Of a stretch of 64,000 bases of DNA, positions 698-56,330 are shown piece by piece. The notes below the pieces were generated by a model, which worked only from the letters and a program-made list of their open reading frames with translations, was not told where the DNA came from and made no database searches. The stretch is from the IMG/VR virus record IMGVR_UViG_3300026484_000007, positions 124,001-188,000 of that record. One strand, 5' to 3'. How positions within the stretch are numbered: the stretch's first letter is position 1; every line of letters starts with the position of its first letter. Both the position numbers and the translations under genes were made by a program.

Positions 698-724
698 ATT
701 AATTCTCCTTTATTTTTTTAATCT

Positions 725-1153: not shown

Positions 1154-1165
1154 TTTTTTTCTCCT

Positions 1166-1438: not shown

Positions 1439-1470
1439 TCTTTATCCTTTTTTTCATTGATATTCTCCGT

Positions 1471-36984: not shown

Positions 36985-37137
36985 GTTTGCTCCTTTTTAA
37001 TTTTTTTAATTTAGAGGATGGTTTGGCTACCATCCTCTGCTATTAAAATATCAATGAATCCGTTAAGGAGTTCTAATATTTAGAGCGTTTTTCTTAATCG
37101 TGAAACATTGATATTATAGCGAGTTCTAAAACCATTT

Positions 37138-38853
37138 TTAAAAATCTATCCCGAGAATTCTTACGGATAATTTCTCAGATCCATTAAACGAATCTAATTC
37201 TGGTTGCCAATATATTTCACAGTAATCTTCTAAAGATCCTTTTATCGAATCTATTTTAGATTCTACCGAAGAATCGTGAAAAAACCACAATGCTTTAATA
37301 TCGATTATGTTTTTATTATCAGTAATATTCAATGTTAAATGGTTTTTATTTTTACCGATAATTCTATAATTTTTAATAAAACATCTTGTTTTGAATATAG
37401 GTTTTTTAAATTTATGACCGAATGGTTCCCATTTCATTAAATAATAATAAATATCAGTATCCCAAATATGAACTTGATTAATACCTATATAGAAATCGGC
37501 GACTATCTTAGTTTTGAATTGTTCTTTTGGTAATTTAGATGCTTCTTCTTGCAGTTTTAAAAATAAATCATTCAAAGATTCTGGTTTAAATCCAATTCCA
37601 CAAGCTTGTTTATGCCCACCAATATGGGTAAAAATATCTGGATTTTCTTCTCTGATATTTCTTAGAATATTTAATATATTTACATCTCCCACAGATCTTC
37701 CAGAACCTGAATAAAAACCATTGTCTTTAATATTGCAAACAATGCAAGGTTTATTATATTTTTCCGCAATTCTACCTGCAATAATCCCAAGAACACCATC
37801 ATATTCTTTTTTGAATTTTCCAGGAATTAAAATAAAATGTTCAGCTTTGATCCAATCTTTATAATACTTTTCAACGTAATCAATTAATTCTTGTTGAATA
37901 GCTTTTCTACTTTCATTTAATTGAAAAATATAATCCATCCATTTTTTAGCATTTTCGTAATCTTCCTGAATTAAATAATTAAAACCATAGACTGGCGACG
38001 CCATTCTTTGAGTAGCATTTAATGCAGGTACTAACGTAAAACTAAAATCACTAGCTACCGGAGCATTATTCATAATTTTAAATGAATTCAGATATTGATG
38101 TTTAGTGTTTTCGAAGTGATTATTTATAAAATCATTTACTAAAAATCTATTAATACTGATATTTAACGGCATTACATCGCTTAAAGTCGTGATTGCCATA
38201 AGATCAATACTATCTTGATACCATTGTTTTAATCTTTCATTTCTAGCATCCTCAGAGAGATCTTTTAAAGATCGCTTTAATAATTCTCTTAAAAAAATAA
38301 AATAAACAACAGTTCCAGAAATATCTTTAAATTCAAAATTGCAATCTGGTTTATATGGATCTATAATAGCATCTGCTTCTGGTATTTGATAATTACCGTC
38401 TATTTTTTCGGGTTGATGATGATCAGTAATAATTACCTTAGCATTTTTTCTATGCGCAAGAATGCATGCATCGAAACTAGTAATTCCATTATCAGCAGTG
38501 CAATATAATTTTACATCATCTTCAACATATTCTGGAATAAAACCATAACCTTTTTTTCTATCAGTAATTTCGATCTTTACTGGATACGGAATAAATTCTT
38601 TAAAAAAACGATATGAAAGAGTTGCAGTTCCTAATCCATCAGTATCACTATCATGAATTAATTTAATTTTTTCTTTTTTTAGAATGCTCTCATAAAATAA
38701 TTCTACTCCTTTTTTTATTTCGGAGTCTGGGTCGGAGGAATATTGATCGATGATATCAATGAAACTTTCGTAATCTTTTATCTTTTCATCTTTAATTCTT
38801 TTTCTTAATAATTCATCTAACTCTTCTAAAGAATTTAACGTTGGTGTAGCCAT
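37138..38853 (-). CDS. recJ: ssDNA-specific exonuclease RecJ
   Basis: HDSDTDG, TADNG, TDHH, SDVMPL, GSGRS, GGHKQACG, EPFG. Confidence 0.93.
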   Translation of the reverse strand: MATPTLNSLEELDELLRKRIKDEKIKDYESFIDIIDQYSSDPDSEIKKGVELFYESILKKEKIKLIHDSDTDGLGTATLSYRFFKEFIPYPVKIEITDRKKGYGFIPEYVEDDVKLYCTADNGITSFDACILAHRKNAKVIITDHHQPEKIDGNYQIPEADAIIDPYKPDCNFEFKDISGTVVYFIFLRELLKRSLKDLSEDARNERLKQWYQDSIDLMAITTLSDVMPLNISINRFLVNDFINNHFENTKHQYLNSFKIMNNAPVASDFSFTLVPALNATQRMASPVYGFNYLIQEDYENAKKWMDYIFQLNESRKAIQQELIDYVEKYYKDWIKAEHFILIPGKFKKEYDGVLGIIAGRIAEKYNKPCIVCNIKDNGFYSGSGRSVGDVNILNILRNIREENPDIFTHIGGHKQACGIGFKPESLNDLFLKLQEEASKLPKEQFKTKIVADFYIGINQVHIWDTDIYYYLMKWEPFGHKFKKPIFKTRCFIKNYRIIGKNKNHLTLNITDNKNIIDIKALWFFHDSSVESKIDSIKGSLEDYCEIYWQPELDSFNGSEKLSVRILGIDF

Positions 38854-38909
38854 AATAATCCTTTTTTAATTTTTTTAAGCAAATAAAAATCTCTGAGAGA
38901 GATAGACTC

Positions 38910-39509
38910 TCATTTGATAAAGTCTAAGGGCATAAGCCCTTTTTTAACTTCATCCCAAAGAGCCCAAATTGCAAACTTCCCAGTTTCACTAGAAAGTTCC
39001 TTGAACTCCTTAATAAAGTCATCTATCTCTTTTTTTAGAGATTCATTATCCCAAATTAATGGGATAATTTTTGCGAAATGGGCTCTTGACCCTAATTCGC
39101 AGATTAATTTTACCTCTTCCGAGGTGATAGACGGTTTTACTAAACCGTCCAATTTCGCGGCCACAGTTGCCGCAAAATCCATCGCAGCTTCAATTGCTGC
39201 AATAGATTTTTTGTTGTACGATAGATAGCCGCTGCTATCTATCGTTACTAAACTTCTATCAGAAAACTTAACCCTCGGGTTAAGTTTTCTGATTTTTTCA
39301 AATCGTGGATCGATCAGTCTCTGATCAATAATCCATGTCTCGCCTCCACACATGAACGCCATGTCGTTCGGGAGACTTAATAATGGGTACGATGTGTACC
39401 CAAACTCAATCCCTGAAACAATTCCAGGGAATTCAATACCAGGGATAGCACTTACCATCCCCGTCAATTTTTTTTCAATTTTTTCCTTAGCTACTCTTCT
39501 TCTAGCCAT
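38910..39509 (-). CDS. hypothetical early-type protein (GC-richer)
   Basis: SD-preceded ATG at 39509; cassette-type promoter upstream. Confidence 0.7.
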   Translation of the reverse strand: MARRRVAKEKIEKKLTGMVSAIPGIEFPGIVSGIEFGYTSYPLLSLPNDMAFMCGGETWIIDQRLIDPRFEKIRKLNPRVKFSDRSLVTIDSSGYLSYNKKSIAAIEAAMDFAATVAAKLDGLVKPSITSEEVKLICELGSRAHFAKIIPLIWDNESLKKEIDDFIKEFKELSSETGKFAIWALWDEVKKGLMPLDFIK

Positions 39510-39634
39510 TCTTTTTTCCTCCTTACCATTTTTTACATACGTTCGCCTTACACGGCGAACAAAAAAACTCGCGAGAAACAAGTGGTATGCCTTGTTCCTC
39601 ACTATAATAATATCAATGATTTACAATCGACTTC

Positions 39635-39675
39635 TTAATTATTAATTAATTATTAATTAATTATTAATTAATTAT
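39635..39675. repeat. 11-bp tandem repeat (TTAATTATTAA), about 3.6 copies
   Basis: Seen directly, just downstream of the RHH gene. Confidence 0.7.
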
Positions 39676-39682
39676 CCCAAAC

Positions 39683-40084
39683 TCACCAAGCTACCGAAAT
39701 TGGAGAAGCTGGAGATGATTGAGCTGGAGCCGTTTGTTGAGAAGCTGCTGGCGGATTTGAATGATTTGATGCAATTGTATTAGATTGCTGATCTTCAAAA
39801 GATACTTCTTCCTCAACCGAATCTACTAAAGATTCAATCTTTCCTTGATCTCTAAATTCTTTTTTTAGATAATATTTTTGATATTCTTTAGATTCAGAAA
39901 ATCTTTTTATAGCAATATTAATTAAACTCGGGATACTTTCTGGATATGTTTTTGATAAAATTTCATATGTTTCATCATCTAAAACGAAAGAATATTTTTT
40001 AGATGAATGAGGTTGTTGTGTTTGTTGAGGCTCTGGAGCCATTTGAGGTTGATTGAACATTTGATTTTGCATTTGATTTTGCAT
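39683..40084 (-). CDS. ribbon-helix-helix protein (ParR-like candidate) with disordered tails
   Basis: KKYSFVLDDETYEIL...IPSLINIAIKRF pattern. Confidence 0.55.
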   Translation of the reverse strand: MQNQMQNQMFNQPQMAPEPQQTQQPHSSKKYSFVLDDETYEILSKTYPESIPSLINIAIKRFSESKEYQKYYLKKEFRDQGKIESLVDSVEEEVSFEDQQSNTIASNHSNPPAASQQTAPAQSSPASPISVAW

Positions 40085-40096
40085 TTATTCTCCTTT

Positions 40097-40765
40097 TTAT
40101 TTTTTTATAAATTCTTTTATTTTATATATTAATTCTTCGAATGAATTTGAAAAATCTTTTGAATCTTTGCAATTATTGAAAAAATTAATATCAGTTTCAA
40201 TATCAATTAAATCTTTTTCATCTTGATTTCCACTTTCGCATGTTTCGCAATTCGATGCAATATTTATAATTAACATATTTTCTCTAGAAAATTTTTTTTG
40301 TAAAAAATCAACTTCCGCTAAAAATCTTACATCAGTAATTAATGGAATTAACATTTTATCATTTTCTTTAGAAATTTCTAAATCTTTTTCAATATCTTTA
40401 TATAATATTTTTATCCAGAACTCGGTTCCAAAGAAGTCTCTCATTGTATTCGCAGTATGTACTAAAAGACTTCTCATATTATATTTTTTATATCCAATTT
40501 CAAAACTTGCGGCTTTCGGTTCTCTTTTGTATTTCTCAATATGATTTAATGGAATACTATACATTTTCGAAATAAATTTTTTAAGTTTATCCGAAATAGT
40601 ATATCTAAGAATTTTAAAGTTTTCCGTGTTTTTAAATTCTTTAATAATTAAATCGCTTATATAATCTTTACCGCATCCTCTATAACCAGTAACTAAAATA
40701 ATTTTAGGCTGGTTATTTTTTGAGGATTGAAATTTTTCTCTAAATTTCATAAATATTTCAGTCAT
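40097..40765 (-). CDS. deoxynucleoside monophosphate kinase
   Basis: TGYRGCGKD P-loop, ITDVRF. Confidence 0.8.
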   Translation of the reverse strand: MTEIFMKFREKFQSSKNNQPKIILVTGYRGCGKDYISDLIIKEFKNTENFKILRYTISDKLKKFISKMYSIPLNHIEKYKREPKAASFEIGYKKYNMRSLLVHTANTMRDFFGTEFWIKILYKDIEKDLEISKENDKMLIPLITDVRFLAEVDFLQKKFSRENMLIINIASNCETCESGNQDEKDLIDIETDINFFNNCKDSKDFSNSFEELIYKIKEFIKK

Positions 40766-40808
40766 TTAAACTCCTTTGATTTATTTTATTTTATTTTATT
40801 ACGCCTGA

Positions 40809-41720
40809 TTATAATACATAACCCTTTACATTCTCGAATTCATATAATTTATCTTTCGGAAATACTACGTTTGGTGGAAATTCCACATCTTCTAAAAGAT
40901 AAGCTCCACCTCCAGCAATAATTACTTTTTCCGATGTCCCAAGAATTTTCTTTTCTGAAACAAGAATACTATTGAATAATTTTTGAATAAAATTATTTTT
41001 TAATTCAGTGATCATTTCTGGAATTCCTTCGACTTCTCTTCCACCGAAAACATATTTTTTCTTTAATAAAATTTTAATTGCTTCTTGTTCAGTAAATTTA
41101 TCTTTAAATTTTGCTTCTAGCCAATTAGTAAAAGGTCTTATGATACTTACGACTCCGTGAGTAGGAAACGATTTACATTTAGCTCTAATTGGCATATTAT
41201 CTTGGAAAGCTAAAAAGTTGATAGTATTGAATCCAATATCGATCACTGCCGCACTTTCAGGAGTTGTTCCAGTATCATGAATATAACTATAATATACTCC
41301 AGCGCCTTGAGGAATTATATTAATATTATTGATGTTTAACGTAATTCCATTTACAGTGATTGTTTTTAATTTTTCAACGAATCTTTCTTTTTCGCTCCAG
41401 TCGGCTAAAGCTAAACCAGTTCTTAAATCAATATCCTCGATCAATTTTCCATCTTTAATTAAATTTAATTTATTTAAAACATGAAATAAAATCAGTGGAC
41501 CGAATTCTTCTAAAAATTCATATTTAGTTGTTGTAAAACTTTCATCGATTGCTACGTCTCCAACTCTATATTTTTTACCGTTGTATTCGTAAATTTCGTC
41601 TTCGCCATAATTAATTCCAGTATCAATAGCGAAAGAGATCGCTGTGGGTAATTTGAATAATTTTCCATTCGCAGATAATTTTGTACTACTATACCCTATA
41701 TCTAAACCTAATCTATACAT
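40809..41720 (-). CDS. actin-like ATPase, ParM/StbA family
   Basis: GLDIGYSSTK, IPQGAG, VIDIGFNT, IIAGGGA, FENVKGY. Confidence 0.88.
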   Translation of the reverse strand: MYRLGLDIGYSSTKLSANGKLFKLPTAISFAIDTGINYGEDEIYEYNGKKYRVGDVAIDESFTTTKYEFLEEFGPLILFHVLNKLNLIKDGKLIEDIDLRTGLALADWSEKERFVEKLKTITVNGITLNINNINIIPQGAGVYYSYIHDTGTTPESAAVIDIGFNTINFLAFQDNMPIRAKCKSFPTHGVVSIIRPFTNWLEAKFKDKFTEQEAIKILLKKKYVFGGREVEGIPEMITELKNNFIQKLFNSILVSEKKILGTSEKVIIAGGGAYLLEDVEFPPNVVFPKDKLYEFENVKGYVL

Positions 41721-42400
41721 TAATTCTCCTTTTTAATAATTTTAGTTTTTTCTGTTGTCTGAGCATGTTCTTTGTATTGCTGAGCTGCTAGCTTAATTAT
41801 TTCTTTATTTCTCTTTTTTGGATCTTTCTTAATTTTTGCGTATGAATCTAAAAAAGATTCTTTTGCTTTTTTAATAATATTATTGTAATTTTTTTTATGT
41901 CTTTTTAATAATTTATAGAATTCATCTTTTTCGATTAAGTAATCGTTTGATAAATGTAAATTATACATTTTATTAATAAGATCCATAAAAGATTCTTCTA
42001 GTTCTTTTTTAAATAAATCTACGAAACCTTTTTTATGCAAATAATGATAAAAAGGACTATCTTTATCAATAATGATCTTAAAAAGATGCTTCTGAGTTTC
42101 AAAAATATATCTAACGGGAAATTCTTGATATTCTTTGTCTTTATTGAATTTAGCCGCTTCTAATCCTAAATTTACTATTTTACAATAATCATGATATAAT
42201 TTTTCTAAAATAAATTCATCTGATATTTTATAAGGATGCTTATTTTGAGGATCGTATTTTTCATCGATGCTTTTAAAAAAATATAATAAAGTATCTTCGA
42301 CGAATTCTTTAGCAAGGGTTTGGGAATTTCGATGATTATTATCAATGATTACCGCTGAATGTTTAGCGAGATCCTCAGCTTTTTCTTTTAATTTTTTCAT
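41720..42400 (-). CDS. hypothetical protein
   Basis: 226-aa ORF with SD. Confidence 0.7.
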   Translation of the reverse strand: MKKLKEKAEDLAKHSAVIIDNNHRNSQTLAKEFVEDTLLYFFKSIDEKYDPQNKHPYKISDEFILEKLYHDYCKIVNLGLEAAKFNKDKEYQEFPVRYIFETQKHLFKIIIDKDSPFYHYLHKKGFVDLFKKELEESFMDLINKMYNLHLSNDYLIEKDEFYKLLKRHKKNYNNIIKKAKESFLDSYAKIKKDPKKRNKEIIKLAAQQYKEHAQTTEKTKIIKKEN

Positions 42401-42445
42401 TTTTTCTCCTTTTTAATTTTTTTAAGCAAATAAAAAACGGGAAGC

Positions 42446-42829
42446 TTAAGTTAGATAAACTAACTCGCTTTCCCAAAATTCGGCGCTAAGCGTCGATTGC
42501 TGAAGCTCTTTTTTTAGAGCCTCAGCCAATCTCATGACCGCGGGTTTGTATAATTCGCGGTTGCAAAATTGAGGGTTGCATGTACCCTCAATTTTGATCA
42601 CACTCTCACCACCGACTGGGCATCCCCAGTCGGTATTATAAACTACGGCCGCGGGCGAAACCGCAGCAGAAATGTATTCGCCGAATTCTTCGAATTCGGC
42701 TTTAGCCAATTGCTGCCAAAGGGCAGCAATTTTATTTGCTAACTCAGGAGCCGCAACTCCTGAGATATTGTGGAAGTAGCCTTCCGCTACCCCCACAACC
42801 ATTCTAAAAGATATTGTTGTCTTCTTCAT
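42446..42829 (-). CDS. putative SAM / SAM-AMP lyase-like protein
   Basis: Y64, E75 and Q111 spacing plus LAEALKKELQQSTL resemble phage SAM lyases (from recall). Confidence 0.5.
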   Translation of the reverse strand: MKKTTISFRMVVGVAEGYFHNISGVAAPELANKIAALWQQLAKAEFEEFGEYISAAVSPAAVVYNTDWGCPVGGESVIKIEGTCNPQFCNRELYKPAVMRLAEALKKELQQSTLSAEFWESELVYLT

Positions 42830-42955
42830 TCTTTCTCCTTTTGATTTTTTTTGCTATTTATATATCAATGTTAAAAAAGGAGTTTTTGAAAATTATTTAA
42901 TAATTATTTAATAATTATTAAATAAAAAATAAAAATAAAAAAACAGAGAGTGGGC

Positions 42956-43114
42956 TTAATACAGTCCACTCTCAACCCCTTCTCTCCAATGAGAGAAAAG
43001 AGTATTGCGCGCCTTAACCGGCGCATTTGGGTGAGTTGTTCTCACCCATTTTGTAAATTTTCTGTATTCGGCGCGAGTGATACTCACACCATTAATTATT
43101 TTCTTTCTCATCAT
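42956..43114 (-). CDS. small early-type protein (52 aa)
   Basis: Manual translation MMRKKIINGVSITRAEYRKFTKWVRTTHPNAPVKARNTLFSHWREGVESGLY; promoter, SD and terminator present. Confidence 0.7.
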   Translation of the reverse strand: MMRKKIINGVSITRAEYRKFTKWVRTTHPNAPVKARNTLFSHWREGVESGLY

Positions 43115-43198
43115 TTCTCCTTTTTATTTTTTTTGCTATTTATATATCAATGATAAAAAAAGAGTTTTTAAAATTAAAAAATAACACCGCGGAGAAGA

Positions 43199-43396
43199 CT
43201 ACTTTTGTAATCTTTCCGCGATGTTATTTAGTAACATCGATTCTGTTATTTTTGATTCGGCCTCGAGAATGAGGTCGTACGCCTCACTCCCGAATTCGAA
43301 TTTTTCTTCTAATTTTTCAAGAAGGTTATACACCTCCTCGAGTTTTTTTTTAGATTCCTTTTCAAGGAATCTAATTTCTTTTTTTGCTAAATTCAT
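43199..43396 (-). CDS. small early-type protein
   Basis: Cassette promoter and SD. Confidence 0.7.
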   Translation of the reverse strand: MNLAKKEIRFLEKESKKKLEEVYNLLEKLEEKFEFGSEAYDLILEAESKITESMLLNNIAERLQK

Positions 43397-43458
43397 TCTT
43401 TCTCCTTTGATTTTTTTTGCTATTTATATATCAATGATAAAAAAGGAGTTTTTTAAAT

Positions 43459-45015
43459 TTATTTTAACACGAAAACATTGTTCTTTGTTCGTGTAATTCC
43501 TACATAAAGTAATCTTAAAAATAAATTATAATCGGTTTCATAAAGATTAATGAAGTCTCTTAAATCTATAAAAACTTCATCCAAAGTTTGTCCTTGAAGT
43601 TTATGGATTGTGCTCGCGTAAGCATAAGTAACATCAGCACATAAATCATTGAAATTGTATGCAAATTTCCAAAAGTTCTTTTTAGAATTTTTAGAGATCT
43701 TTCTTTGATTATTCATTGTTTTCGCAATATCAAAAACTGCTTCTTTATATAATGGAAAAAGATCTTCTTTAGATCCATCTCCCAAAGGAACTAAAAATTT
43801 ACTTTTATTTTCTGCTGTTAATAAAAAAGCATTGAATTTTATAGGTTTAAGTAAATACGAAGCTTTATTATCTTCAAATAAAAATGGATAGAGATCTTTT
43901 AAAGATGCTAAATAGTCTGGTAAGATTTTTCTAAGTCTATCGATGACTTCTTGAAATTCTTTAATCTTATTCAAAGTAAAAGTTACCAATTCTGGTTCTT
44001 TGATAACTTTAGTCTCTTCTCCATTTGTGAAAATATTGCAAGTGCTTAGTAAATTTCTATCAGTTAATTCATTAGAATTATTAGAAAAAACTATATAATT
44101 ATACGGAGCATTAAATATTAATTTATCTCCTTTTGAATATAATTCATCAGGATTTTTTACTTCTGGATCAAATCTTCTAAAATGGATATTATAATAATTT
44201 ACAAAATTATTTGTAAAAGATCCAATTTTGATTCTTTTTTCATTTGAGAATGATTCTGTTGAATCCGTTAAATCAACAGAATCCATCGGTAAAATTGTCT
44301 CTCCGAATCTATGCTCTAAAAACTTATTAAAAAAATCATTAAATTCAAATTCTCCATATACATGAAAATGATCTATTAAAGATACAATCTCTGAAAGCGG
44401 AGCTTTTTTCTTATTTTCTTCGTATTCTTTAATTAAAAATCTTACTTTTTCAAAGATCTCAAAAAGATCGTTTTTTGTTCTAAGTATCTTTTTTAGAACT
44501 ATTCTATCATAAGGTTCGTCAAAAATTGGAGATCTTGTTTCTTTTACTGGAGGTAATTGATATGGATCTCCAATAAATAAAATATCAAAATTTTTTAAAT
44601 ACTTATTAATGATCCAAAAAAGATCCTTATCGATCATTGAAATTTCGTCGATAATAAAAAAGTCTGCAGAGATCATCATATCTCTTAATTTCGGGACAAA
44701 AATTCTTTCACCGAATTCATTAATATCTGGACGAATTTCAAAATAAGAATGAATTGTCGTAATATTTACTCCTTTTATATTTTGCTCAGATAGCATATTA
44801 TGAATTACTATTGAACTTTGATGAGTAGGAGTTAATATTTGAACGGATCTTTTTTGCTCTTTTAACATTTTTAATAATTCAACGAGAGTCGTCGTTTTTC
44901 CTGTTCCTGCTGATCCAGTAAGGATCAGTTTTCTACCATAACCAAGTTTTTTTGGATCTTCTTTAAAATACTCTAAGACTTTTTGCTGTTCTTCATTTAA
45001 TTTTATTTCTCCCAT
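43459..45015 (-). CDS. Dda/RecD-like SF1B helicase
   Basis: GSAGTGKTT, IIDEISM, GDPYQLPPV, TIHKLQGQT, YVGITR. Confidence 0.9.
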   Translation of the reverse strand: MGEIKLNEEQQKVLEYFKEDPKKLGYGRKLILTGSAGTGKTTTLVELLKMLKEQKRSVQILTPTHQSSIVIHNMLSEQNIKGVNITTIHSYFEIRPDINEFGERIFVPKLRDMMISADFFIIDEISMIDKDLFWIINKYLKNFDILFIGDPYQLPPVKETRSPIFDEPYDRIVLKKILRTKNDLFEIFEKVRFLIKEYEENKKKAPLSEIVSLIDHFHVYGEFEFNDFFNKFLEHRFGETILPMDSVDLTDSTESFSNEKRIKIGSFTNNFVNYYNIHFRRFDPEVKNPDELYSKGDKLIFNAPYNYIVFSNNSNELTDRNLLSTCNIFTNGEETKVIKEPELVTFTLNKIKEFQEVIDRLRKILPDYLASLKDLYPFLFEDNKASYLLKPIKFNAFLLTAENKSKFLVPLGDGSKEDLFPLYKEAVFDIAKTMNNQRKISKNSKKNFWKFAYNFNDLCADVTYAYASTIHKLQGQTLDEVFIDLRDFINLYETDYNLFLRLLYVGITRTKNNVFVLK

Positions 45016-45026
45016 ATTTGCTCTCC

Positions 45027-46778
45027 TTACATAAAATTAATTTTAGCATTCGGATATGTTCCTAATACGTTATTTCTGATAATAGTAGTTACTGATTTAT
45101 TCAAAGTTTCAAACATTTCCGTAACTGGAAATAATGCAATAGGAGTTGGTTTTCCTTCATGTAATCTTGTAATTCTCCCAAGAGATTGAACGATAGTAAT
45201 TCTTCCAATTATCGGTGATCCAAAAATGATACCACTTAAAGAACTTTTATCGAATCCTTCTCTAAGAAGATTAAAGTTGCTTATTAATATCTTTGATTCT
45301 TTAATTCTTTGGTAATAAAGATCTAAAGCTTTTTGGATATTAATCTCTTGAAGTTCTAGCGATTTTACACGTTCTTCTTTGTATAATAAATCAGCTTCTT
45401 TTCTCTTTAATTCTTTATTTTTTACTTTAAGATTTAATTCTTCTTTGAATTCTTTCAGTTTATTTTTTAAAATTTTATTTTCATCTTTAGCAATCTGAAT
45501 TGAATCTTGTTTAGAATCTCCTTTTAAAACTAAAGTTTCGTCTTGAAATTCTGGGTATAATCCTAATAATATATCAGCCAATTTTTTAGCTAATTTATTA
45601 GTGCTAAAAAGTATTACTACTTCCCTATTAGTATCTCTAAACCATTTAACCCACTGAGTAAGAAATTGCAAATAACTATCTTTATTATATAAATACATAT
45701 TATATAATGAAAGCATCATAGGATAATCATTCATACGTTGTTTTAAAGCAAAAGCTTCTTTTTCATTAAAATGAATAAAATCATTATTTAATCTTTGAAT
45801 GTAAATTTCAGGCGTTAGAACCTCCGCATCCGCTTCGATTAAAACATCACCAATACTAGTATTTAATAAAAATTTATTAAGATCTTTACGGAATGGAGTA
45901 GCGCTTAATCCCATAACGTTACATGTTTTAAATAAAGATAAAGTTTTACTATAACCATATGCACCAAAACCGTGGCATTCATCAGCTAAAACAAAGTCAA
46001 CTTCAGAATATAATTCTTGTAAAAGATTAATTTTAATTCTTTTAATTTGGCTTAATAAAGATTGTGGTTTAGTAATAATTACTTTAGCTTTCATTGCTTC
46101 TTCGATATCTTTTATTTCGGATCCTTGAAGGATACATATATCTTCTTCTTTTAAATCAGTAAACGTTAAAAATGCTTGTTTCCATTGATCTTCTAAGATT
46201 ACTTTTGGAACGATTACTAAAGTTTTTTTAAAGATCTGTCCGAGAAAAATTCCCATAAACGTTTTGCCAACTCCTGGAGCTGCTTGGAGAATTCCTCTGA
46301 TCTTTTTTTGATCATTAATGATCTTTAAAAGATGCTTTATTATAGGAACTTGATTTTCTCTTGGATCATTATTTACTATATAATTCTTATAATTCTTATT
46401 AGAAATATTTTTTATCATTGATATATCCAGTTCATTTCCACCGGCTTCCCCAAGATCAACTTCGTATCTTTTTTCGATCTCTTGTATATTTCTTATGAAA
46501 TCTACGAATTCGTATTTGTTCCCTTGATTATCCATCGCAATGAATTCTTCTAATTTTAACATATTTTCTTCCCAAAAGAATCTTGGAAGAAGAACCCACC
46601 CGATAGTTATGTCTTCTATTTCTAATCTTTTTGGATCGATGTATACTTGATTTTCATCGAAATACATTACTCCTTCGTCAAGATCTTCGATTTTAAATTT
46701 CCATCCTTGATTTAATTTATATTTTGGATTTTTTAATTCTTGATAAATTTCATATTTTATAAAAACTCCGTTTTCCAT
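45027..46778 (-). CDS. SF2 helicase (UvsW-like)
   Basis: APGVGKT, DECH, LSATP, EGFD, QSLGRITR. Confidence 0.88.
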   Translation of the reverse strand: MENGVFIKYEIYQELKNPKYKLNQGWKFKIEDLDEGVMYFDENQVYIDPKRLEIEDITIGWVLLPRFFWEENMLKLEEFIAMDNQGNKYEFVDFIRNIQEIEKRYEVDLGEAGGNELDISMIKNISNKNYKNYIVNNDPRENQVPIIKHLLKIINDQKKIRGILQAAPGVGKTFMGIFLGQIFKKTLVIVPKVILEDQWKQAFLTFTDLKEEDICILQGSEIKDIEEAMKAKVIITKPQSLLSQIKRIKINLLQELYSEVDFVLADECHGFGAYGYSKTLSLFKTCNVMGLSATPFRKDLNKFLLNTSIGDVLIEADAEVLTPEIYIQRLNNDFIHFNEKEAFALKQRMNDYPMMLSLYNMYLYNKDSYLQFLTQWVKWFRDTNREVVILFSTNKLAKKLADILLGLYPEFQDETLVLKGDSKQDSIQIAKDENKILKNKLKEFKEELNLKVKNKELKRKEADLLYKEERVKSLELQEINIQKALDLYYQRIKESKILISNFNLLREGFDKSSLSGIIFGSPIIGRITIVQSLGRITRLHEGKPTPIALFPVTEMFETLNKSVTTIIRNNVLGTYPNAKINFM

Positions 46779-46905
46779 TTCTTTATCCTTTTTTTAATTT
46801 TTTTAAGCAAATAAAATAATTTTGCGAATTCGACGATTTTCCGAACTCGCAATCAAAACACTAATTATATCTTTAAAATCTAAAGAAAAAGAAGACCTGC
46901 GAGAG

Positions 46906-47193
46906 TTATAATTTAACTCTCACCGGGTCTTCAAACCACTCCATTGTTGCGTTAGATGGAAGAATGATCTTCCATCTTTTTCTGGCAGTCGCCACTACCT
47001 CTTTTGGGTTGGTAGTGGCAAACACTGCCATGTCGCCGCTACGACCTGCAAGGCCGTAGACAGCGACTTTTATGTATTTGTCGCTGTCGTATGGTTTTAC
47101 CCATACGACAGCGACTTTAATTCCCTGAATATTTTGACTTGGCGCCTTTTGCGCCAAGTCGATTAATTCAAAAATATTTAAATTCAATTTCAT
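46906..47193 (-). CDS. small early-type protein
   Basis: Cassette promoter, SD, GC-richer. Confidence 0.7.
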   Translation of the reverse strand: MKLNLNIFELIDLAQKAPSQNIQGIKVAVVWVKPYDSDKYIKVAVYGLAGRSGDMAVFATTNPKEVVATARKRWKIILPSNATMEWFEDPVRVKL

Positions 47194-47272
47194 TCTTCCT
47201 CCTTAATTTTTTTTGCTATTAGATTATCAATGATTTAATTAATCATTATAAAATAAAAAGAAAAAGAAGAGG

Positions 47273-47539
47273 TTAGAGGTATTCGATCTTAACGATCTCC
47301 TCCTCTAAAAACACTCTTCTTTTTCTCTCTCCTCTCGGAGAGATTAAGTAGGCTTCTTTCAGCCCACCTTTCCCCGAAAGGAGATATCCCGTGCTTTTGC
47401 TGAATGCCCATTCAGCAAAAGCATTATAAATCCCGTATCCTCCCGCACTATAGTACGGGAACGGGATCACTTCCGAATTCCTTTTTTCCCAAATCAGTTC
47501 GAGCTTCCACTCGAACTGATATTTGAAATCTCTTTTCAT
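47273..47539 (-). CDS. small early-type protein
   Basis: Cassette promoter and SD. Confidence 0.7.
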   Translation of the reverse strand: MKRDFKYQFEWKLELIWEKRNSEVIPFPYYSAGGYGIYNAFAEWAFSKSTGYLLSGKGGLKEAYLISPRGERKRRVFLEEEIVKIEYL

Positions 47540-47645
47540 TCTTCCTCCTTAATTTTTTTTTGCTTAATTGATATCAATGAGGTTGTGGAAGAGTTCTAAA
47601 AATTTTAATGAAATAAAAAAAATTTTGATAAAAAGAAAGCTTGAG

Positions 47646-47930
47646 TCAAATGGCTCTTTCGAGCCATTTGACTGCCTTCTTCAAGGCTTTCACCTTGAAG
47701 TGAAGGTCGTCGACCTTCACTTTGAGCTCAAACTCTTCTGAGCTCAAAATATCCATATGCATGAGGAAGTCAACTTCCCCATGCATTTTAATATACTCGG
47801 CTTCAGCCGCTTCAAGAGCGGCTTCAGCAGCCTCAGTTTCCCTAAGAGCGGCTTTCGCCGCTCTTAGATTTTTTTTCTCTTCTTTAAGAGCGGCTTTCGC
47901 CGCTCTTAATAATTTTTCAATTTTTTCCAT
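47646..47930 (-). CDS. small helical early-type protein with an LRAAKAAL duplication
   Basis: Cassette promoter and SD. Confidence 0.7.
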   Translation of the reverse strand: MEKIEKLLRAAKAALKEEKKNLRAAKAALRETEAAEAALEAAEAEYIKMHGEVDFLMHMDILSSEEFELKVKVDDLHFKVKALKKAVKWLERAI

Positions 47931-48052
47931 TCTTCCTCCTTGAAATTTTTTTTTGCTATTAGATTATCAATGATACATAGATGTAATTCTAAAAAAAATT
48001 TTAAAAAAATTAAGAAAATTTAATAAATAAAAAATTAAGAAAAAAGCAACGG

Positions 48053-48247
48053 TTATTCCGGAGCGGGTAGCTCAACTACCTCAACTCCGTAACTAGGGTT
48101 GCTTTCTTCTTGGAGGGCGCGGACATATGCCTCCGCGTCCTCCTTTTCCCAGAATACTTTGGATACGGAACTGATTCCGTATCCAAAGTAACCATCTACG
48201 AAGTAGTACGCTACTCCGTAGATTTTTTTATTTTCTAAATTTTCCAT
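48053..48247 (-). CDS. small early-type protein
   Basis: Cassette promoter and SD. Confidence 0.7.
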   Translation of the reverse strand: MENLENKKIYGVAYYFVDGYFGYGISSVSKVFWEKEDAEAYVRALQEESNPSYGVEVVELPAPE

Positions 48248-48357
48248 ATCTCCTCCTTAATTTTTTTTGCTATTAGATTATCAATGATACATAGATGTAA
48301 TTCTAAAAAAAATTTTAAAAAAATTAAGAAATAAAAAGAGATTGGATGATCTGGAGT

Positions 48358-48561
48358 TTAAAACTCCAAGTCATCCAAATCATCTAATTCTAGCAGCTTC
48401 TCTAAAGCTGCTGCTTTTTCAGCAGCAGCTTTTGCTACTTTAGCCTCATACGAGGCCAAAATTGCGGCTTCTTTAGCCGCTTTTTTTGCTGCTGCAGCTT
48501 TTGCTGCAGCTGTTTCTGAGGCTCTTTGAGCCTCAGAAACTCTTTCAATTAGAAATTTCAT
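48358..48561 (-). CDS. Ala/Lys-rich microprotein with acidic tail
   Basis: SD-preceded ATG at 48561. Confidence 0.7.
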   Translation of the reverse strand: MKFLIERVSEAQRASETAAAKAAAAKKAAKEAAILASYEAKVAKAAAEKAAALEKLLELDDLDDLEF

Positions 48562-48681
48562 TCTTTCCTCCTTAAATTTTTTTTGCTTAATTGATATCAA
48601 TGATATAAAACGAAGTTTTAAAATAATTTACATGTACTTAAATATACTTAAATACTTAAAATTGCTCACAAAGGATATAAT

Positions 48682-49317
48682 ATGTTTTTTATAAATGAAA
48701 TGACGGAGAAAAAAATAAATAATATCGCTAATATTATTATCGAATTAAATACTCTTTTAGAAGAAGCGGCAGGGAAATACTCAATGCCTTTAACTGGAGT
48801 TCCAAAAGCAGGAAAAAGTTTAATATCAGGTGGTTTAGATCATGTTTATAAAAAAAGCAAAGATAAATATTTTATAGAGAAATTATCGCCGGATATGGAA
48901 GGAAAATGGACTTTTGATACCGGAAAGTTAGAATTAGCTAGAGAAATGAAAAATAAATTAAAAGACAAAAATGAGTTTTTTGATGATAGATTCGTAAAAA
49001 TAAAAAATACTCATATTCCTAATTTAATTAAAAATTTTGATAAAACTGTGTTTGATTTGGGAGGTATTCCTTCGAAAGAAAACGAGAGTTTTATCGATAA
49101 TATACAAAAAAGTTCAATTTTAAATGATAAAAAATTCGTACCAGTCGTTCTTTCTCCTGATAGACAGAAATCGTACGAATGGCAAAAGTTTTTCAATGAA
49201 AAATTCGAAACCGATCCTATAATTTATACTCCAAATTGGAATTTTAAAAAAGATATAAAACAACAATCGATATATCATGCTAATGAACTTCTTAACCGAA
49301 TCCAAAAAAGATTATAA
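48682..49317 (+). CDS. P-loop ATPase of the Csx3-associated (AAA-type) family
   Basis: GVPKAGKS Walker A, SPDMEGKW (cf. CPDGEGxW, from recall), VFDLGG Walker B; convergent with csx3. Confidence 0.7.
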   Translation: MFFINEMTEKKINNIANIIIELNTLLEEAAGKYSMPLTGVPKAGKSLISGGLDHVYKKSKDKYFIEKLSPDMEGKWTFDTGKLELAREMKNKLKDKNEFFDDRFVKIKNTHIPNLIKNFDKTVFDLGGIPSKENESFIDNIQKSSILNDKKFVPVVLSPDRQKSYEWQKFFNEKFETDPIIYTPNWNFKKDIKQQSIYHANELLNRIQKRL

Positions 49318-49338
49318 ATAAAAAAACATAATCCCTGC

Positions 49339-49635
49339 TTACACAGGGATTATATCTCCGACTTTTACGTCGGGTGTGTGGCTTTCAGCCACAATTCCCC
49401 CGCTTAGGCGAGGGTCGTAGCACGCCACGAATGGCGTGCAATGGTACTCATGTACCATCGCGGCAAAGAGCCATATCGGCCCTCTACCGCTTAAAATTAT
49501 ACCTACCCCAGGTTCAACCTGAGGCAATCTTTTAATTGCCTCAGGTAACTCCGCAGGGGTAATAACCCCACTTGTGAGCTCAAAGCTCACAAGTGCAATT
49601 TTATCGCTTACTTCTTTTACATCATATTTTATCAT
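49339..49635 (-). CDS. csx3: CRISPR ring nuclease Csx3/Crn3
   Basis: GVITPAEL, GIILSGRGPIWLFA..H.YH, YDPRL.GGIV..SH. Confidence 0.9.
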   Translation of the reverse strand: MIKYDVKEVSDKIALVSFELTSGVITPAELPEAIKRLPQVEPGVGIILSGRGPIWLFAAMVHEYHCTPFVACYDPRLSGGIVAESHTPDVKVGDIIPV

Positions 49636-49701
49636 CGTCTTTCTCCTTTTGATTTTTTTGCTATTAGATTATCAATGATATACAAATCAGTTCTAAAAAA
49701 A

Positions 49702-49842
49702 TCACCAGAAGTTTTTATTCTTGTACTTCTGGCGATTGTATTTCTTAGAGTTCTTTTGAACTCTAGTATGGGGCTTTAATCCGCCCCATGTCTGACGAGT
49801 TTTGATCTCGTCTTTTTTGATTTTAATTGAAAATTTTTTCAT
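49702..49842 (-). CDS. small basic peptide (46 aa)
   Basis: Manual translation MKKFSIKIKKDEIKTRQTWGGLKPHTRVQKNSKKYNRQKYKNKNFW; promoter and SD present. Confidence 0.7.
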   Translation of the reverse strand: MKKFSIKIKKDEIKTRQTWGGLKPHTRVQKNSKKYNRQKYKNKNFW

Positions 49843-49998
49843 AATTTCTCCTTTTGATTTTTTTTAATTTTTCTGATAAATATATATCAATGTCTAAAAA
49901 AATTATTATAAAAATAAAAACTTAACAACTCTAAGATGTGTTTTTTCCGCTTTTGCGTCTGAGTTTAGCACCTCTCAGTCCGTCAGCCTCTTGGCTTC

Positions 49999-50151
49999 TT
50001 ATTCAGAAGTCGCAAGAACAGCTGCTTCGAAAGCAGCCTCAAGAGGCATTTCAGCCTCTTGAACTGCCTGAAGCATCGCTGCTACAAGCGCTTCAGAAGG
50101 GGCATTAAGCCCCTTCGAAGCCAAGAAAGCTAAAATCGCTTTCTTGTCCAT
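49999..50151 (-). CDS. Ala-rich microprotein (50 aa)
   Basis: Manual translation MDKKAILAFLASKGLNAPSEALVAAMLQAVQEAEMPLEAAFEAAVLATSE; promoter and SD present. Confidence 0.7.
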   Translation of the reverse strand: MDKKAILAFLASKGLNAPSEALVAAMLQAVQEAEMPLEAAFEAAVLATSE

Positions 50152-50379
50152 TTTCCTCCTTTATAATTTTTTTGCTAATTAAATATCTAATAAAACTAAA
50201 GCAGTTCTAAAAATTCTTTAAAAATAAAAATGAAGGAGGGAGAGAGGAAAGAGAAAGAAAAGAGAGGGAAAATGTCGCTATATTTCTAATAAAACTTTTT
50301 AGTTCTAAAATCGATTTTAAAATAATTTAAAAATAATTTAAAAAATAAATTTTTTTGATAAATAAAAGTCTGGCGAGAG

Positions 50380-50697
50380 TTATAATAACTCCTTCCAAAC
50401 TTCGTGCAAATCGTTTGCTGCTTTATATAATTTTTTTTTCAATTTCTTTAATTTTTTGATTTTGCCTCTATTTACACGAAGCTCGTCCTCGAGCTTCGTT
50501 TTATGGCGGGAATACTCCGCCATTTCTTCCCCAGAGGCTCCTACCTCTGGGAAGTTTAATCTTTCATTCTGCAACCAGCAGAACTTGAGGTGCTCTCGCA
50601 CCTCTTTTAATTCTTTTAATTCGCATTTTACTTTCTCAGCCTCATATCTGAGGCTATTTTCATAATCGAATACTTCATTTTTTAAATCTTTTCTCAT
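50380..50697 (-). CDS. small coiled-coil early-type protein
   Basis: Cassette promoter and SD. Confidence 0.7.
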   Translation of the reverse strand: MRKDLKNEVFDYENSLRYEAEKVKCELKELKEVREHLKFCWLQNERLNFPEVGASGEEMAEYSRHKTKLEDELRVNRGKIKKLKKLKKKLYKAANDLHEVWKELL

Positions 50698-50772
50698 TTC
50701 TTTCTCCTTTGATTTTTTTTGCTAATTAAATATCTAATAAACCAAAAGCAGTTCTAAAAATTCTTTAAAAAT

Positions 50773-50908
50773 AAAAAAGATAGGAGGAGTCCGCATAAGC
50801 GAACTCCCGGACCTCAAAGGGTCACGTAGCTTTATGACACAGATATGGTTACTCGTTCCGAAGAACTTTCACCATATCGAAAGGTGCCATAAAGCTACCC
50901 TATCTACT
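50773..50908 (-). ncRNA. putative structured ncRNA 2 (~135 nt, multi-way junction, loop E, UUCG tetraloop)
   Basis: Closing stem AGAUAGG/CCUAUCU, 15-bp and 8-bp stems, GAAA/GAGUA internal loop, GUUC-UUCG-GAAC, two more hairpins, U-tract; own promoter. Confidence 0.8.
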
Positions 50909-50944
50909 ATTTATATATCTAATAAACGTTTACGAGTTCTAAAA
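50901..50944 (-). promoter_or_regulatory. phage promoter identical to 4679-4722
   Basis: 44-bp exact repeat. Confidence 0.75.
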
Positions 50945-51000
50945 TAATTTAAACCATTTTTTCTAACGACAAAAAAACGCGTGAGATCTTAAATAGATCA

Positions 51001-51546: not shown

Positions 51547-51603
51547 TTTAAATCCTTTTTTAACTATTTTTGATATATAAATATCAATGTTAAAAAGGAT
51601 CTT

Positions 51604-56232: not shown

Positions 56233-56330
56233 TTTATTTTATTTTATTTTATTTTATTTTACTTTACTTTATTTTATTTTATTTTATTTTATTTTATTTT
56301 ATTTTATTTTATTTTATTTTATTTTATTTT
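56233..56330. repeat. (TTTTA)n pentanucleotide microsatellite, about 19 units
   Basis: Seen directly; two CTTTA variant units. Confidence 0.9.

What the first reader, a model, noticed from the sequence alone, without database searches (positions are those of the whole stretch)
39635..42925. ParMRC-like actin module in a phage with its own RNAP
Seen: a ParM-family actin (40809-41720), an RHH-like protein two genes downstream, and 11-bp AT tandem repeats on both sides of the region (39635-39675 and about 42892-42925). Established: plasmid ParMRC consists of an actin, an RHH adaptor and short iterons, whereas phiKZ-like phages position their DNA with the tubulin PhuZ. Inference: actin-based genome positioning or carrier-state partitioning. 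The repeats are low-complexity and may be slippage products.
Basis: partly seen in the sequence, partly recalled or inferred. Interest (0 to 1): 0.6.

Follow-up and report, generated by a model that had tools for sequence, protein, structure and literature searches.

The report
Actin–adaptor pair in jumbo phage
A 273-kb hydrothermal-vent phage carries a plasmid-style actin (ParM-like) gene with a small DNA-binding adaptor (ParR-like) gene, and the pair is conserved across a wide group of large lytic phages; the AT-rich repeats taken for its centromere are a common feature of this genome.

Summary
All three observed elements are present. ORF 40809-41720(-) is a ParM-type actin: Pfam ALP_N and MreB-like_C, phrog_691, an AF2 model at pLDDT 91, and best folds Ta0583 and the pCBH, pSK41 and R1 ParMs. 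ORF 39683-40084(-) has a ParR layout: a ribbon-helix-helix-like core, a disordered linker and a terminal Trp motif.

New here: all 23 related loci examined carry this small gene downstream of the actin on the same strand, adjacent in about 14. They include the lytic phages YerA41 and Carin-5. Trp lies in the last six residues in 22 of 25 copies and is almost absent elsewhere. The nearest plasmid ParMs, from Campylobacterota, are followed by small genes with the same layout and tail. An in-silico actin-tail docking gave weak support only (0.40 against 0.01).

The 11-bp AT arrays are real and non-random. However, they are 2 of 25 such arrays in the genome, sit just upstream of a promoter-like motif, and are missing from 21 of 23 relatives. 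They are not credible as parC.

The genome has two sets of multisubunit RNAP genes. No PhuZ, phiKZ-type shell protein or integrase was detected.

Best reading: a ParM/ParR-derived, lytic-cycle DNA-positioning module whose DNA site is unknown.

The parts
40809..41720 (-). ParM-type actin-like ATPase (303 aa), single copy in the genome
   Evidence: Pfam ALP_N and MreB-like_C, and phrog_691. The phosphate-1 (DxGxxxxK), phosphate-2 (DxGxxT), Q138-G139 and GGG270-272 motifs are invariant in 25 homologues. AF2 pLDDT is 90.8, and the top folds are Ta0583 and ParMs. Single copy.
39683..40084 (-). ParR-like adaptor candidate (133 aa). It has a Q-rich N-terminus, a ribbon-helix-helix-like core (about residues 29-80), a low-complexity disordered linker and a C-terminal motif ending in Trp.
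   Evidence: A homologue lies downstream of the actin in 23 of 23 related loci. AF2 gives pLDDT above 90 for residues 30-70, with helices at 37-44, 48-63, 66-72 and 75-80. The VIA-wide list is dominated by RHH proteins and is headed by pSK41 ParR 2q2k (Z 3.2, rmsd 1.7 over 40 residues). The Atlas leads are RHH families. No Pfam RHH family matches. Docking gave weak support only.
40097..40765 (-). dNMP kinase-like P-loop gene lying between the actin and adaptor genes; a passenger, not part of the conserved pair
   Evidence: phrog_139 at 4e-21, with weak Pfam P-mevalo_kinase and DNMK matches. It occupies this slot only in the window, L003, L004 and L007; other relatives have a dUTPase or nothing there.
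41720..42400 (-). 226-aa helical protein of unknown function with a basic tail. Its stop codon overlaps the actin ATG by 1 nt, so the two are probably translationally coupled. Possible lineage-specific accessory factor.
   Evidence: ORF coordinates. No Pfam or PHROG match. Homologous to the proteins in the same slot in L003 and L004, and by profile comparison in L007, L013-L015 and L025 (hhalign probability 92%, E 7e-7). Absent from YerA41, Carin-5 and most other relatives.
42446..42829 (-). 127-aa protein of unknown function; first gene of the apparent transcription unit
   Evidence: ORF. No family match. Not conserved next to the actin in relatives.
42840..42880 (-). Promoter-like motif plus ribosome-binding site in front of the 127-aa gene. 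It is one of three near-identical copies (also about 43120-43160 and 43405-43445).
   Evidence: An 18-mer occurs only three times in the 272.6-kb genome, at window 42853, 43135 and 43419. The wider motif class CATTGATAT, mostly preceded by AACTCCTT-like sequence, is clustered at window 37056-51589.
42891..42925 (.). AT-only tandem array, period 11, 3.2 copies. It lies between an intrinsic-terminator-like hairpin and the promoter-like motif.
   Evidence: TRF; sequence context.
39635..39675 (.). AT-only tandem array, period 11, 3.7 perfect copies. It starts 8 bp after the adaptor gene's stop and lies 17 bp upstream of a CATTGATAT motif.
   Evidence: TRF; sequence. The unit is not enriched elsewhere in the window: 38 matches with up to 1 mismatch against 35 expected. 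The orthologous spacer of L003 has no array.
39565..39618 (-). CATTGATAT motif followed by a 12-bp-stem hairpin and a T-run. It is either the terminator of the actin unit or a structured 5' leader of the next gene.
   Evidence: The next gene probably starts at the ATG at 39509 (residue 32 of ORF 38910-39602), judged from its alignment with the L003 homologue.

Best explanation
The locus encodes a two-protein cytomotive module derived from type II (ParM/ParR) partition systems. A broad clade of large and jumbo phages that encode their own multisubunit RNA polymerases has fixed this module inside the DNA-replication and nucleotide-metabolism gene block.

Proposed mechanism:
- The 303-aa actin polymerises with ATP.
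- The 133-aa partner dimerises through a ribbon-helix-helix core and binds phage DNA.
- Its flexible linker presents a C-terminal Trp-containing peptide that captures the actin filament.
- Growing filaments therefore move, spread or anchor replicating phage genomes during lytic infection.

This is analogous to AlpC/AlpA of prophage CGP3 and, functionally, to the PhuZ tubulin of phiKZ-like phages, which this genome lacks.

Shown here: the actin fold with intact ATPase motifs; conserved linkage of the two genes; the ParR-like architecture with a conserved terminal Trp; the replication-module context.

Inferred: polymerisation, tail-actin binding, DNA binding and the positioning role.

The DNA site is unknown. 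The two 11-bp AT arrays are most likely promoter-upstream AT tracts or slippage products, not a centromere.
For: (1) The actin is identified by sequence, motifs and fold.

(2) All 23 loci whose actin is at least 39% identical carry a homologue of the 133-aa protein downstream on the same strand. It is immediately adjacent or overlapping in about 14 loci, and 1-2 passenger genes intervene in the rest. Every other neighbour varies. This set includes the cultured lytic phages YerA41 (gp104/gp106) and Carin-5 (gp218/gp216).

(3) The 35 paired actins form one group on the tree (support 99/99), apart from the plasmid ParMs.

(4) The partner shows a strand-helix-helix core, a disordered linker, and Trp in the last 6 residues in 22 of 25 copies (Phe in the other 3). 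Trp occurs only 2 times in the other 2,725 residues.

(5) The fold and feature searches return mainly RHH proteins, with pSK41 ParR first and pB171 ParR also listed.

(6) The nearest plasmid ParMs are from Campylobacterota (32% identity, E 1e-38). Each is followed by an overlapping 86-97-aa gene with the same layout and a tail ending in Trp or Trp-Gly, and the C. upsaliensis tail closely matches the window's.

(7) Docking of the actin with adaptor residues 95-133 scored ipSAE 0.40 against a best control of 0.01. The runs agree in at least 57% of contacts, and the partner pLDDT is at least 43. The tool rates this 'weak support': the mark was reached by 51 of 78 solved complexes and 2 of 108 mismatched pairs, but scores of 0.60 or under came from only 5 of those solved complexes and from all 4 mismatches that passed.

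(8) The module sits among helicases, RecJ and a dNMP kinase here, and among topoisomerase II, an exonuclease, a dUTPase and helicases in YerA41 and Carin-5. In YerA41 the corresponding gene block (g136-g145) is listed among the middle genes (PMC7354516).

(9) The genome shows no tubulin, PhuZ, integrase or resolvase.

(10) AlpAC sets a precedent for a viral actin plus adaptor that is needed for efficient viral DNA replication (PMC4446434).
Against: - No Pfam RHH or ParR family matches any of the 23 adaptor homologues.
- Foldseek finds nothing for the adaptor model, and the VIA Z-scores are 3.2 or lower, which the tool itself says can reflect a common arrangement.
- The profile comparison with the plasmid ParR-like proteins is in register but not significant (probability 14%, E 0.002).
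- The docking result is only 'weak support', which the tool describes as more often wrong than right unless the pairing was already likely.
- No conserved centromere-like repeat accompanies the module in relatives.
- Acidic or aromatic C-terminal tails also occur in replisome proteins, so the tail's partner could be something other than the actin.
- No expression or protein data exist for this phage: no RNA run holds it.
Confidence: 0.55

Rival explanations
1. Full ParMRC with the AT arrays as centromere: the adaptor binds the 11-bp arrays at 39635-39675 and 42891-42925, which bracket the transcription unit as R1 parC iterons do.
For: The period is 11 bp, as in the R1 parC iterons (recalled from the literature, not tested here). 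The arrays flank one apparent transcription unit. Arrays of this kind are non-random. One relative, L016, has a perfect 10-bp x 4.7 array 40-86 bp upstream of its actin gene.
Against: There are 25 comparable AT-only arrays in the genome, and 14 of 100 intergenic regions carry one. The closest relative L003 (actin 89% identical) has no array in the orthologous spacer, and 21 of 23 relatives have none near the module. The two units differ from each other. The first unit is at chance frequency elsewhere, and the second belongs to a word that is common across the window. Both arrays sit just upstream of a promoter-like motif.
Confidence: 0.1
2. Carrier-state or plasmid-prophage partitioning: the module segregates an episomal phage genome at host cell division, as in plasmid prophages.
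For: The module descends from plasmid partition systems. From memory, not tested: Campylobacter phages that carry a distant actin homologue belong to groups for which carrier-state life cycles have been reported. No integrase is needed for an episomal lifestyle.
Against: The cultured relatives YerA41 and Carin-5 are described as lytic (PMC7354516, PMC12686479). The module is embedded in the replication block, and that block is middle-expressed during lytic infection in YerA41 (PMC7354516). The genome is of the phiKZ/AR9 type with dual RNAPs. No repressor or plasmid-replication genes were identified, but no systematic search was made.
Confidence: 0.12
3. The small protein is a transcription regulator or a replisome-associated DNA-binding protein whose C-terminal tail contacts another partner such as the polymerase, a helicase or the RNAP. 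The actin acts without a DNA adaptor, for example as a scaffold or by remodelling the host cell, as chromosomal CorMR does.
For: Most RHH proteins are repressors. Tails of the SSWDxF type resemble acidic-aromatic replisome tails (general knowledge). The genes sit within the replication module. ParMR systems can be repurposed away from DNA segregation (CorMR; 10.1101/2025.06.27.661541; PDB 9rmi appears among the fold matches).
Against: The actin gene is the only invariant neighbour of the small gene across 23 loci. Plasmid par loci of the nearest ParM clade have the same layout and terminal Trp. The docking signal is specific relative to its controls, though weak.
Confidence: 0.18

Closest known systems
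Type II plasmid partition systems (R1 ParMRC, pSK41 ParMR, pCBH ParM)
   Same: The motor is an actin-fold ALP. A small co-oriented downstream gene has an N-terminal RHH-like DNA-binding core and a flexible C-terminal tail. The structural matches to the ParMs have E values of 1e-14 to 1e-18. pSK41 ParR is the best structural match of the adaptor core.
   Different: The module sits on a 273-kb lytic-type phage genome within the replication module, not on a low-copy plasmid. No conserved iteron centromere lies next to the operon. Passenger genes such as a dNMP kinase or dUTPase are often inserted between the two genes. Sequence identity to solved ParMs is only about 16-21%.
ParM/StbA loci of Campylobacterota plasmids (Nitrosophilus labii pHRV44, C. 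iguaniorum pCIG1485E, C. upsaliensis plasmid 2)
   Same: These are the nearest plasmid actins (32% identity, E 1e-38). The downstream overlapping 86-97-aa protein has the same strand-helix-helix core, charged linker and a tail ending in Trp or Trp-Gly.
   Different: They lie on plasmids. They form a clade separate from the phage actins. Homology of the adaptors is not significant by profile comparison. These plasmid loci are themselves uncharacterised.
AlpC/AlpA/alpS of Corynebacterium glutamicum prophage CGP3
   Same: A virus-encoded actin with a co-transcribed DNA-binding adaptor, expressed early and required for efficient viral DNA replication (PMC4446434, PMC5539076). This is the functional model adopted here.
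   Different: CGP3 is a cryptic integrated prophage of an actinobacterium. Its adaptor gene lies upstream of the actin gene, and the alpS sites lie in the operon's upstream region. No sequence relationship was tested or seen here.
PhuZ tubulin spindle of phiKZ-like nucleus-forming jumbo phages
   Same: A phage-encoded cytomotive filament in a jumbo phage with split multisubunit RNAPs; the proposed role is positioning of replicating phage DNA.
   Different: The protein superfamily differs (tubulin versus actin). This genome has no tubulin and no detectable phiKZ gp54-type shell protein. PhuZ has no RHH adaptor.

Membership tests
Type II partition system (ParMRC) | Actin-fold ATPase of the ParM/ALP family with intact nucleotide-binding motifs | tested here: met
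   Pfam ALP_N and MreB-like_C, and phrog_691. Motif residues are invariant in 25 homologues. The AF2 model matches ParMs and Ta0583 at E 1e-14 to 2e-20.
Type II partition system (ParMRC) | Co-oriented, co-transcribed small adaptor gene next to the actin gene | tested here: met
   A homologue is present downstream in 23 of 23 related loci and adjacent in about 14. In the window one passenger gene intervenes, and no terminator-like site is predicted between the actin and adaptor genes.
Type II partition system (ParMRC) | The adaptor is a ribbon-helix-helix DNA-binding dimer | tested here: inconclusive
   The AF2 core is confident. The VIA list is dominated by RHH proteins, with pSK41 ParR first, but Z is 3.2 or lower. 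The Atlas leads are RHH families at 0.83-0.86. No Pfam RHH match appears in any of 23 members, and neither PDB sequence-profile match (E 0.41 and 3.2) is an RHH protein.
Type II partition system (ParMRC) | The adaptor's C-terminal tail binds the actin filament | tested here: inconclusive
   Trp is conserved at the terminus (22 of 25). Docking ipSAE is 0.40 against a best control of 0.01, rated 'weak support'.
Type II partition system (ParMRC) | Centromere (parC) of tandem iterons adjacent to the operon and bound by the adaptor | tested here: not met
   The arrays exist, but they belong to a genome-wide class, are absent in 21 of 23 relatives including the closest, and lie in promoter-upstream positions. 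Binding itself cannot be tested here.
Type II partition system (ParMRC) | Located on a low-copy replicon that must be segregated at cell division | tested here: not met
   The record is a 272.6-kb virus genome, 97% complete, with dual multisubunit RNAPs and no integrase or resolvase. The cultured relatives are lytic (PMC12686479).
Type II partition system (ParMRC) | ATP-dependent polymerisation into dynamic filaments | not testable with these tools
   Only the conservation of the motifs could be checked.
PhuZ/TubZ phage tubulin systems | Tubulin/FtsZ-fold GTPase encoded by the phage | tested here: not met
   PF00091 and phiKZ gp39 find nothing in the 97%-complete genome.
phiKZ-type nucleus-forming phages (chimallin shell) | Homologue of the shell protein phiKZ gp54 | tested here: inconclusive
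   A single-sequence search with gp54 found nothing. Shell proteins diverge fast, and no profile was available.

The most novel reading that the evidence does not exclude
A whole clade of PhuZ-less large and jumbo lytic phages uses an actin-based ParM/ParR-derived machine, in place of a tubulin spindle, to organise replicating genomes inside the infected cell. The clade encodes its own RNAPs and includes the T-hypermodified YerA41 and Carin-5. The ParR-like adaptor recognises phage DNA, possibly its modified bases or dispersed sites, without a classical iteron centromere.
Probability: 0.3. Interest if true: 0.75.

Novelty: new variant of a known kind. Interest (0 to 1): 0.55.

Why it matters
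Phage-encoded cytoskeletons are known mainly from the PhuZ tubulin of nucleus-forming phages and from one prophage actin (AlpC). This analysis shows a conserved actin-plus-adaptor pair across a wide, mostly uncultured clade of large lytic phages that lack PhuZ.

Its adaptor is annotated only as 'hypothetical' in the deposited genomes of YerA41 (gp106) and Carin-5 (gp216). Both phages are cultured with tractable hosts, so it can be tested directly whether lytic phages use actin filaments to position or spread their DNA.

The result also flags a ParR subtype with a terminal Trp tail that is shared with uncharacterised Campylobacterota plasmid par loci. In addition, it corrects the tempting but unsupported reading of AT-rich tandem arrays as a centromere.

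Tried and rejected
- A megablast of 5 kb against phage records found nothing.
- The search for related loci with the single actin sequence found nothing; it worked with an alignment.
- The word-index search with the adaptor returned only the protein itself, and tblastn against phage records found nothing. The adaptor family had to be collected by an HMM search of the flanks of the actin loci.
- Pfam at E up to 5 on all 23 adaptors gave no RHH family. The two PDB sequence-profile matches (E 0.41 and 3.2) are not RHH proteins. Foldseek on the adaptor model found nothing.
- The profile comparison of phage adaptors with plasmid ParR-like proteins was not significant.
- Complex prediction gave 'weak support' only. 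It is reported as such and is not treated as evidence of binding on its own.
- A search for conserved repeats beside the module in relatives found only L016 and a weak array in L023.
- Rfam and tRNA scans of the region found nothing credible.
- The sigma-70 promoter scan was at chance level, 24 sites against 23 expected.
- The supplement of the YerA41 paper held no entry for the genes of interest.
- No RNA run holds the locus.
No letters from those places went to any tool afterwards, so copy-number variation of the arrays among strains could not be checked.
- The large representative-protein search was deliberately not run. A roughly 55-residue core profile could not have reached the plasmid ParRs, and the claim does not rest on an absence of relatives.
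Full report
**Setting**

The window is positions 124001-188000 of a 272,602-bp virus record. The record is linear and estimated 97% complete. GC content is 27%, and almost all genes lie on the minus strand. The DNA is held almost completely by a hydrothermal-vent metagenome run, which is probably its source. Runs from two other studies hold about half or less of it.

The genome has two sets of genes for multisubunit RNA polymerase beta and beta' pieces, which is the phiKZ/AR9 style. The following searches found nothing:
- the tubulin family PF00091 and phiKZ PhuZ;
- the phiKZ shell protein gp54, a single-sequence search and therefore inconclusive;
- tyrosine integrases and serine resolvases.

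**What is at the coordinates**

Read along the minus strand, the locus contains:

| Coordinates | Feature |
|---|---|
| 45027-46778 | SNF2/ResIII helicase |
| 43459-45015 | Dda/PIF1-type helicase |
| 43199-43396 | 65-aa gene with its own promoter-like motif |
| 42956-43114 | 52-aa gene with its own promoter-like motif |
| 42446-42829 | 127-aa protein of unknown function |
| 41720-42400 | 226-aa helical protein; its stop overlaps the next ATG by one base |
| 40809-41720 | actin-like protein |
| 40097-40765 | dNMP kinase-like protein |
| 38910-39602 | next ORF; its true start is probably the ATG at 39509 |
| 37138-38853 | RecJ |

One is at 39635-39675 (period 11, 3.7 perfect copies). The other is at 42891-42925 (period 11, 3.2 copies, 95% match).

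**The actin**

The protein matches Pfam ALP_N (5e-15), MreB-like_C (2e-13) and phrog_691 'partition protein' (7e-37). By sequence alone it barely reaches solved ParMs (E about 0.01 to pCBH ParM).

An AF2 model built on 25 homologues is confident (pLDDT 90.8, pTM 0.86). Its best Foldseek matches are Ta0583 and then the pCBH, pSK41, B. thuringiensis, Alp12 and R1 ParMs. These rank ahead of MamK, MreB and actin.

The phosphate-1, phosphate-2, Q-G and GGG motifs are invariant across 25 homologues, which suggests an active ATPase. The gene is single copy.

**The decisive comparative result**

The actin has 218 relatives at E of 1e-5 or better in metagenomes, several of them on contigs of 220-290 kb. 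The closest cultured carriers are:
- Cobetia phage Carin-5 (46% identity);
- Yersinia phages YerA41 and GN1 (41% identity).

In these phages the gene sits between topoisomerase II and an exonuclease on one side and a dUTPase and helicases on the other.

I gathered 29 flanked loci and built an HMM from six copies of the 133-aa protein. The HMM found a homologue in every one of the 23 distinct loci whose actin is at least 39% identical. The homologue is always downstream and on the same strand. It is directly adjacent to or overlaps the actin stop in about 14 loci. One or two passenger genes (a dNMP kinase, a dUTPase or others) intervene in the rest, which include the window, YerA41 (gp106) and Carin-5 (gp216).

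No other neighbour is conserved across the set. On a maximum-likelihood tree the 35 paired actins form one group (support 99/99), separate from the plasmid ParMs.

**The partner protein**

All copies share the same parts:
- a short strand (xxVxLD);
- two helices, the second resembling RNSLINxGIKL;
- a further short Y/F-rich helix;
- a low-complexity linker that cannot be aligned;
- an aromatic C-terminus.

Trp lies within the last six residues in 22 of 25 copies, and Phe in the other three. Trp occurs only twice in the remaining 2,725 residues.

AF2 models residues 30-70 at pLDDT above 90 and leaves the rest disordered.

The evidence for an RHH fold has three weak strands:
- The exhaustive VIA search returns low Z-scores, as expected for a domain of about 45 residues. 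Even so, the list is dominated by RHH proteins. pSK41 ParR (2q2k) is first (Z 3.2, rmsd 1.7 Å over 40 of 44 residues). pB171 ParR, omega, Arc, ParD, CopA, RelB, NikR and TraM follow.
- The language-model search returns RHH_1, MetJ, CcdA, RHH_9 and CB_ParB_C clusters at 0.83-0.86, which count as leads only.
- The sequence pattern fits.

Against this, Pfam, a PDB sequence-profile search and Foldseek give nothing that points to an RHH fold. I therefore rate the RHH fold as likely but not proven.

**Link to plasmid par loci**

The nearest plasmid actins are annotated ParM/StbA genes on Campylobacterota plasmids (32% identity, E 1e-38). This fits a vent origin and hints at a Campylobacterota host.

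Each of these genes is followed by an overlapping 86-97-aa gene. Its product has the same strand-helix-helix core, charged linker and a tail ending in Trp or Trp-Gly. The C. upsaliensis tail closely matches the window's. The profile-profile comparison aligns the cores in register but is not significant (probability 14%, E 0.002).

**Interaction test**

Docking of the actin with adaptor residues 95-133 scored ipSAE 0.40 against a best control of 0.01. The runs agree in at least 57% of contacts, and the partner pLDDT is at least 43. The tool's verdict is 'weak support'. The mark was reached by 51 of 78 solved complexes and 2 of 108 mismatched pairs. Scores of 0.60 or under came from only 5 of those solved complexes and from all 4 mismatches that passed. 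I count this as a small increment on a prior that synteny and architecture had already raised.

**The repeats**

AT-only arrays with period 8-13 and at least 3 copies are non-random in this genome. There are 25, of which 19 are intergenic. When intergenic DNA is re-simulated, only about 7 arrays remain, essentially the coding ones. They are nevertheless spread over the whole genome, and 14 of 100 intergenic regions of at least 60 bp carry one.

Both arrays at this locus lie directly upstream of a CATTGATAT promoter-like motif. That motif, mostly preceded by AACTCCTT-like sequence, recurs at about ten sites between window positions 37056 and 51589.

Further points against a centromere role:
- The first unit occurs at chance frequency elsewhere (38 against 35 expected).
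- The second belongs to a word that is common throughout the window.
- The closest relative, L003 (actin 89% identical), has no array in the orthologous spacer.
- 21 of 23 relatives have none near the module. The exception is L016, with a perfect 10-bp x 4.7 array 40-86 bp upstream of its actin gene.

The arrays are therefore better read as promoter-upstream AT tracts or slippage products. The adaptor's DNA site remains unknown.

I tried to check strain-level copy-number variation by laying reads. No letters from those places were sent to any tool afterwards.

**Other components**

The 226-aa protein coupled to the actin start belongs to a family that fills the same slot, between the SNF2 helicase and the actin, in a subclade comprising L003, L004, L007, L013-L015 and L025 (hhalign probability 92%, E 7e-7). 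It is absent from YerA41, Carin-5 and most other loci. It is at best a lineage-specific accessory.

**Function**

Several points favour a lytic-cycle role in organising replicating phage DNA over partition of a carrier-state episome:
- the module lies in the replication block;
- the corresponding YerA41 gene block (g136-g145) is listed among the middle genes (PMC7354516);
- the cultured relatives are lytic (PMC12686479);
- no integration genes were found;
- AlpAC of CGP3 provides a precedent (PMC4446434, PMC5539076).

Neither function has been shown. Searches of the held literature found no description of this actin-adaptor pair in lytic or jumbo phages. The deposited genomes label the actin 'partition protein' or 'DnaK-like chaperone', and they label the adaptor 'hypothetical protein'.

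**Verdict**

This is a new variant of a known kind of system. It is of moderate interest, mainly because it can be tested directly in cultured phages.

Noticed in passing
window 42840-42880, 43120-43160, 43405-43445 (minus strand): Three consecutive small genes (127, 52 and 65 aa) are each preceded by a near-identical block of about 60 bp that combines a promoter-like motif with a ribosome-binding site. The shared 18-mer occurs nowhere else in the 272.6-kb genome. A looser motif, CATTGATAT mostly preceded by AACTCCTT-like sequence, marks about ten sites confined to window 37056-51589, plus one at genome position 117317. This may be a phage-RNAP promoter class for the replication block.
   Followed up: partly
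genome G000:C1:89057-89168 (outside the window): This is the highest-scoring tandem repeat of the genome: four perfect copies of a 28-bp unit that contains a 9-bp inverted repeat. It is a candidate protein-binding array, origin or stack of terminators, and it is worth testing as a binding site for the RHH-like adaptor.
   Followed up: no
window 566-1875 and genome 117585-119240, 218270-218398, 229539-230456: The genome carries two sets of split multisubunit RNAP beta and beta' genes, in the phiKZ/AR9 style of virion and non-virion polymerases. No PhuZ and no phiKZ-type shell protein were detected.
   Followed up: partly
L018:3862-6871 and L023:935-6891: In two related phages, genes for DUF7487 proteins sit on both sides of the actin gene or within it. 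In L023 the actin reading frame appears interrupted, with N-terminal coding sequence upstream of a GC-rich stretch. This suggests mobile-element or intron-like insertions that target the gene.
   Followed up: partly
window 37056-37000 and 39618-39565; genome about 117317: Three of the CATTGATAT motifs are followed at once by a stable GC-rich hairpin, and the one at 39602-39571 also has a T-run. These could be structured 5' leaders, or terminators overlapping promoters.
   Followed up: no
window 56233-56330: A pentanucleotide AT-only microsatellite of 19.6 copies.
   Followed up: no
L027:4324-4910, L028:4323-4907, L029:4633-4992: More distant phage actins (23-28% identical, of the Vibrio/Campylobacter/Rhizobium-phage type) lack the RHH-like partner. 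They are instead preceded by small proteins with acidic disordered tails, two of the three types ending in Phe. These may be a different adaptor type located upstream.
   Followed up: no
whole record; The source habitat is a hydrothermal-vent metagenome. The nearest plasmid ParMs come from vent-associated Campylobacterota and Aquificota, and one close actin homologue was binned as an Epsilonproteobacteria MAG. This hints at a Campylobacterota host.
   Followed up: no
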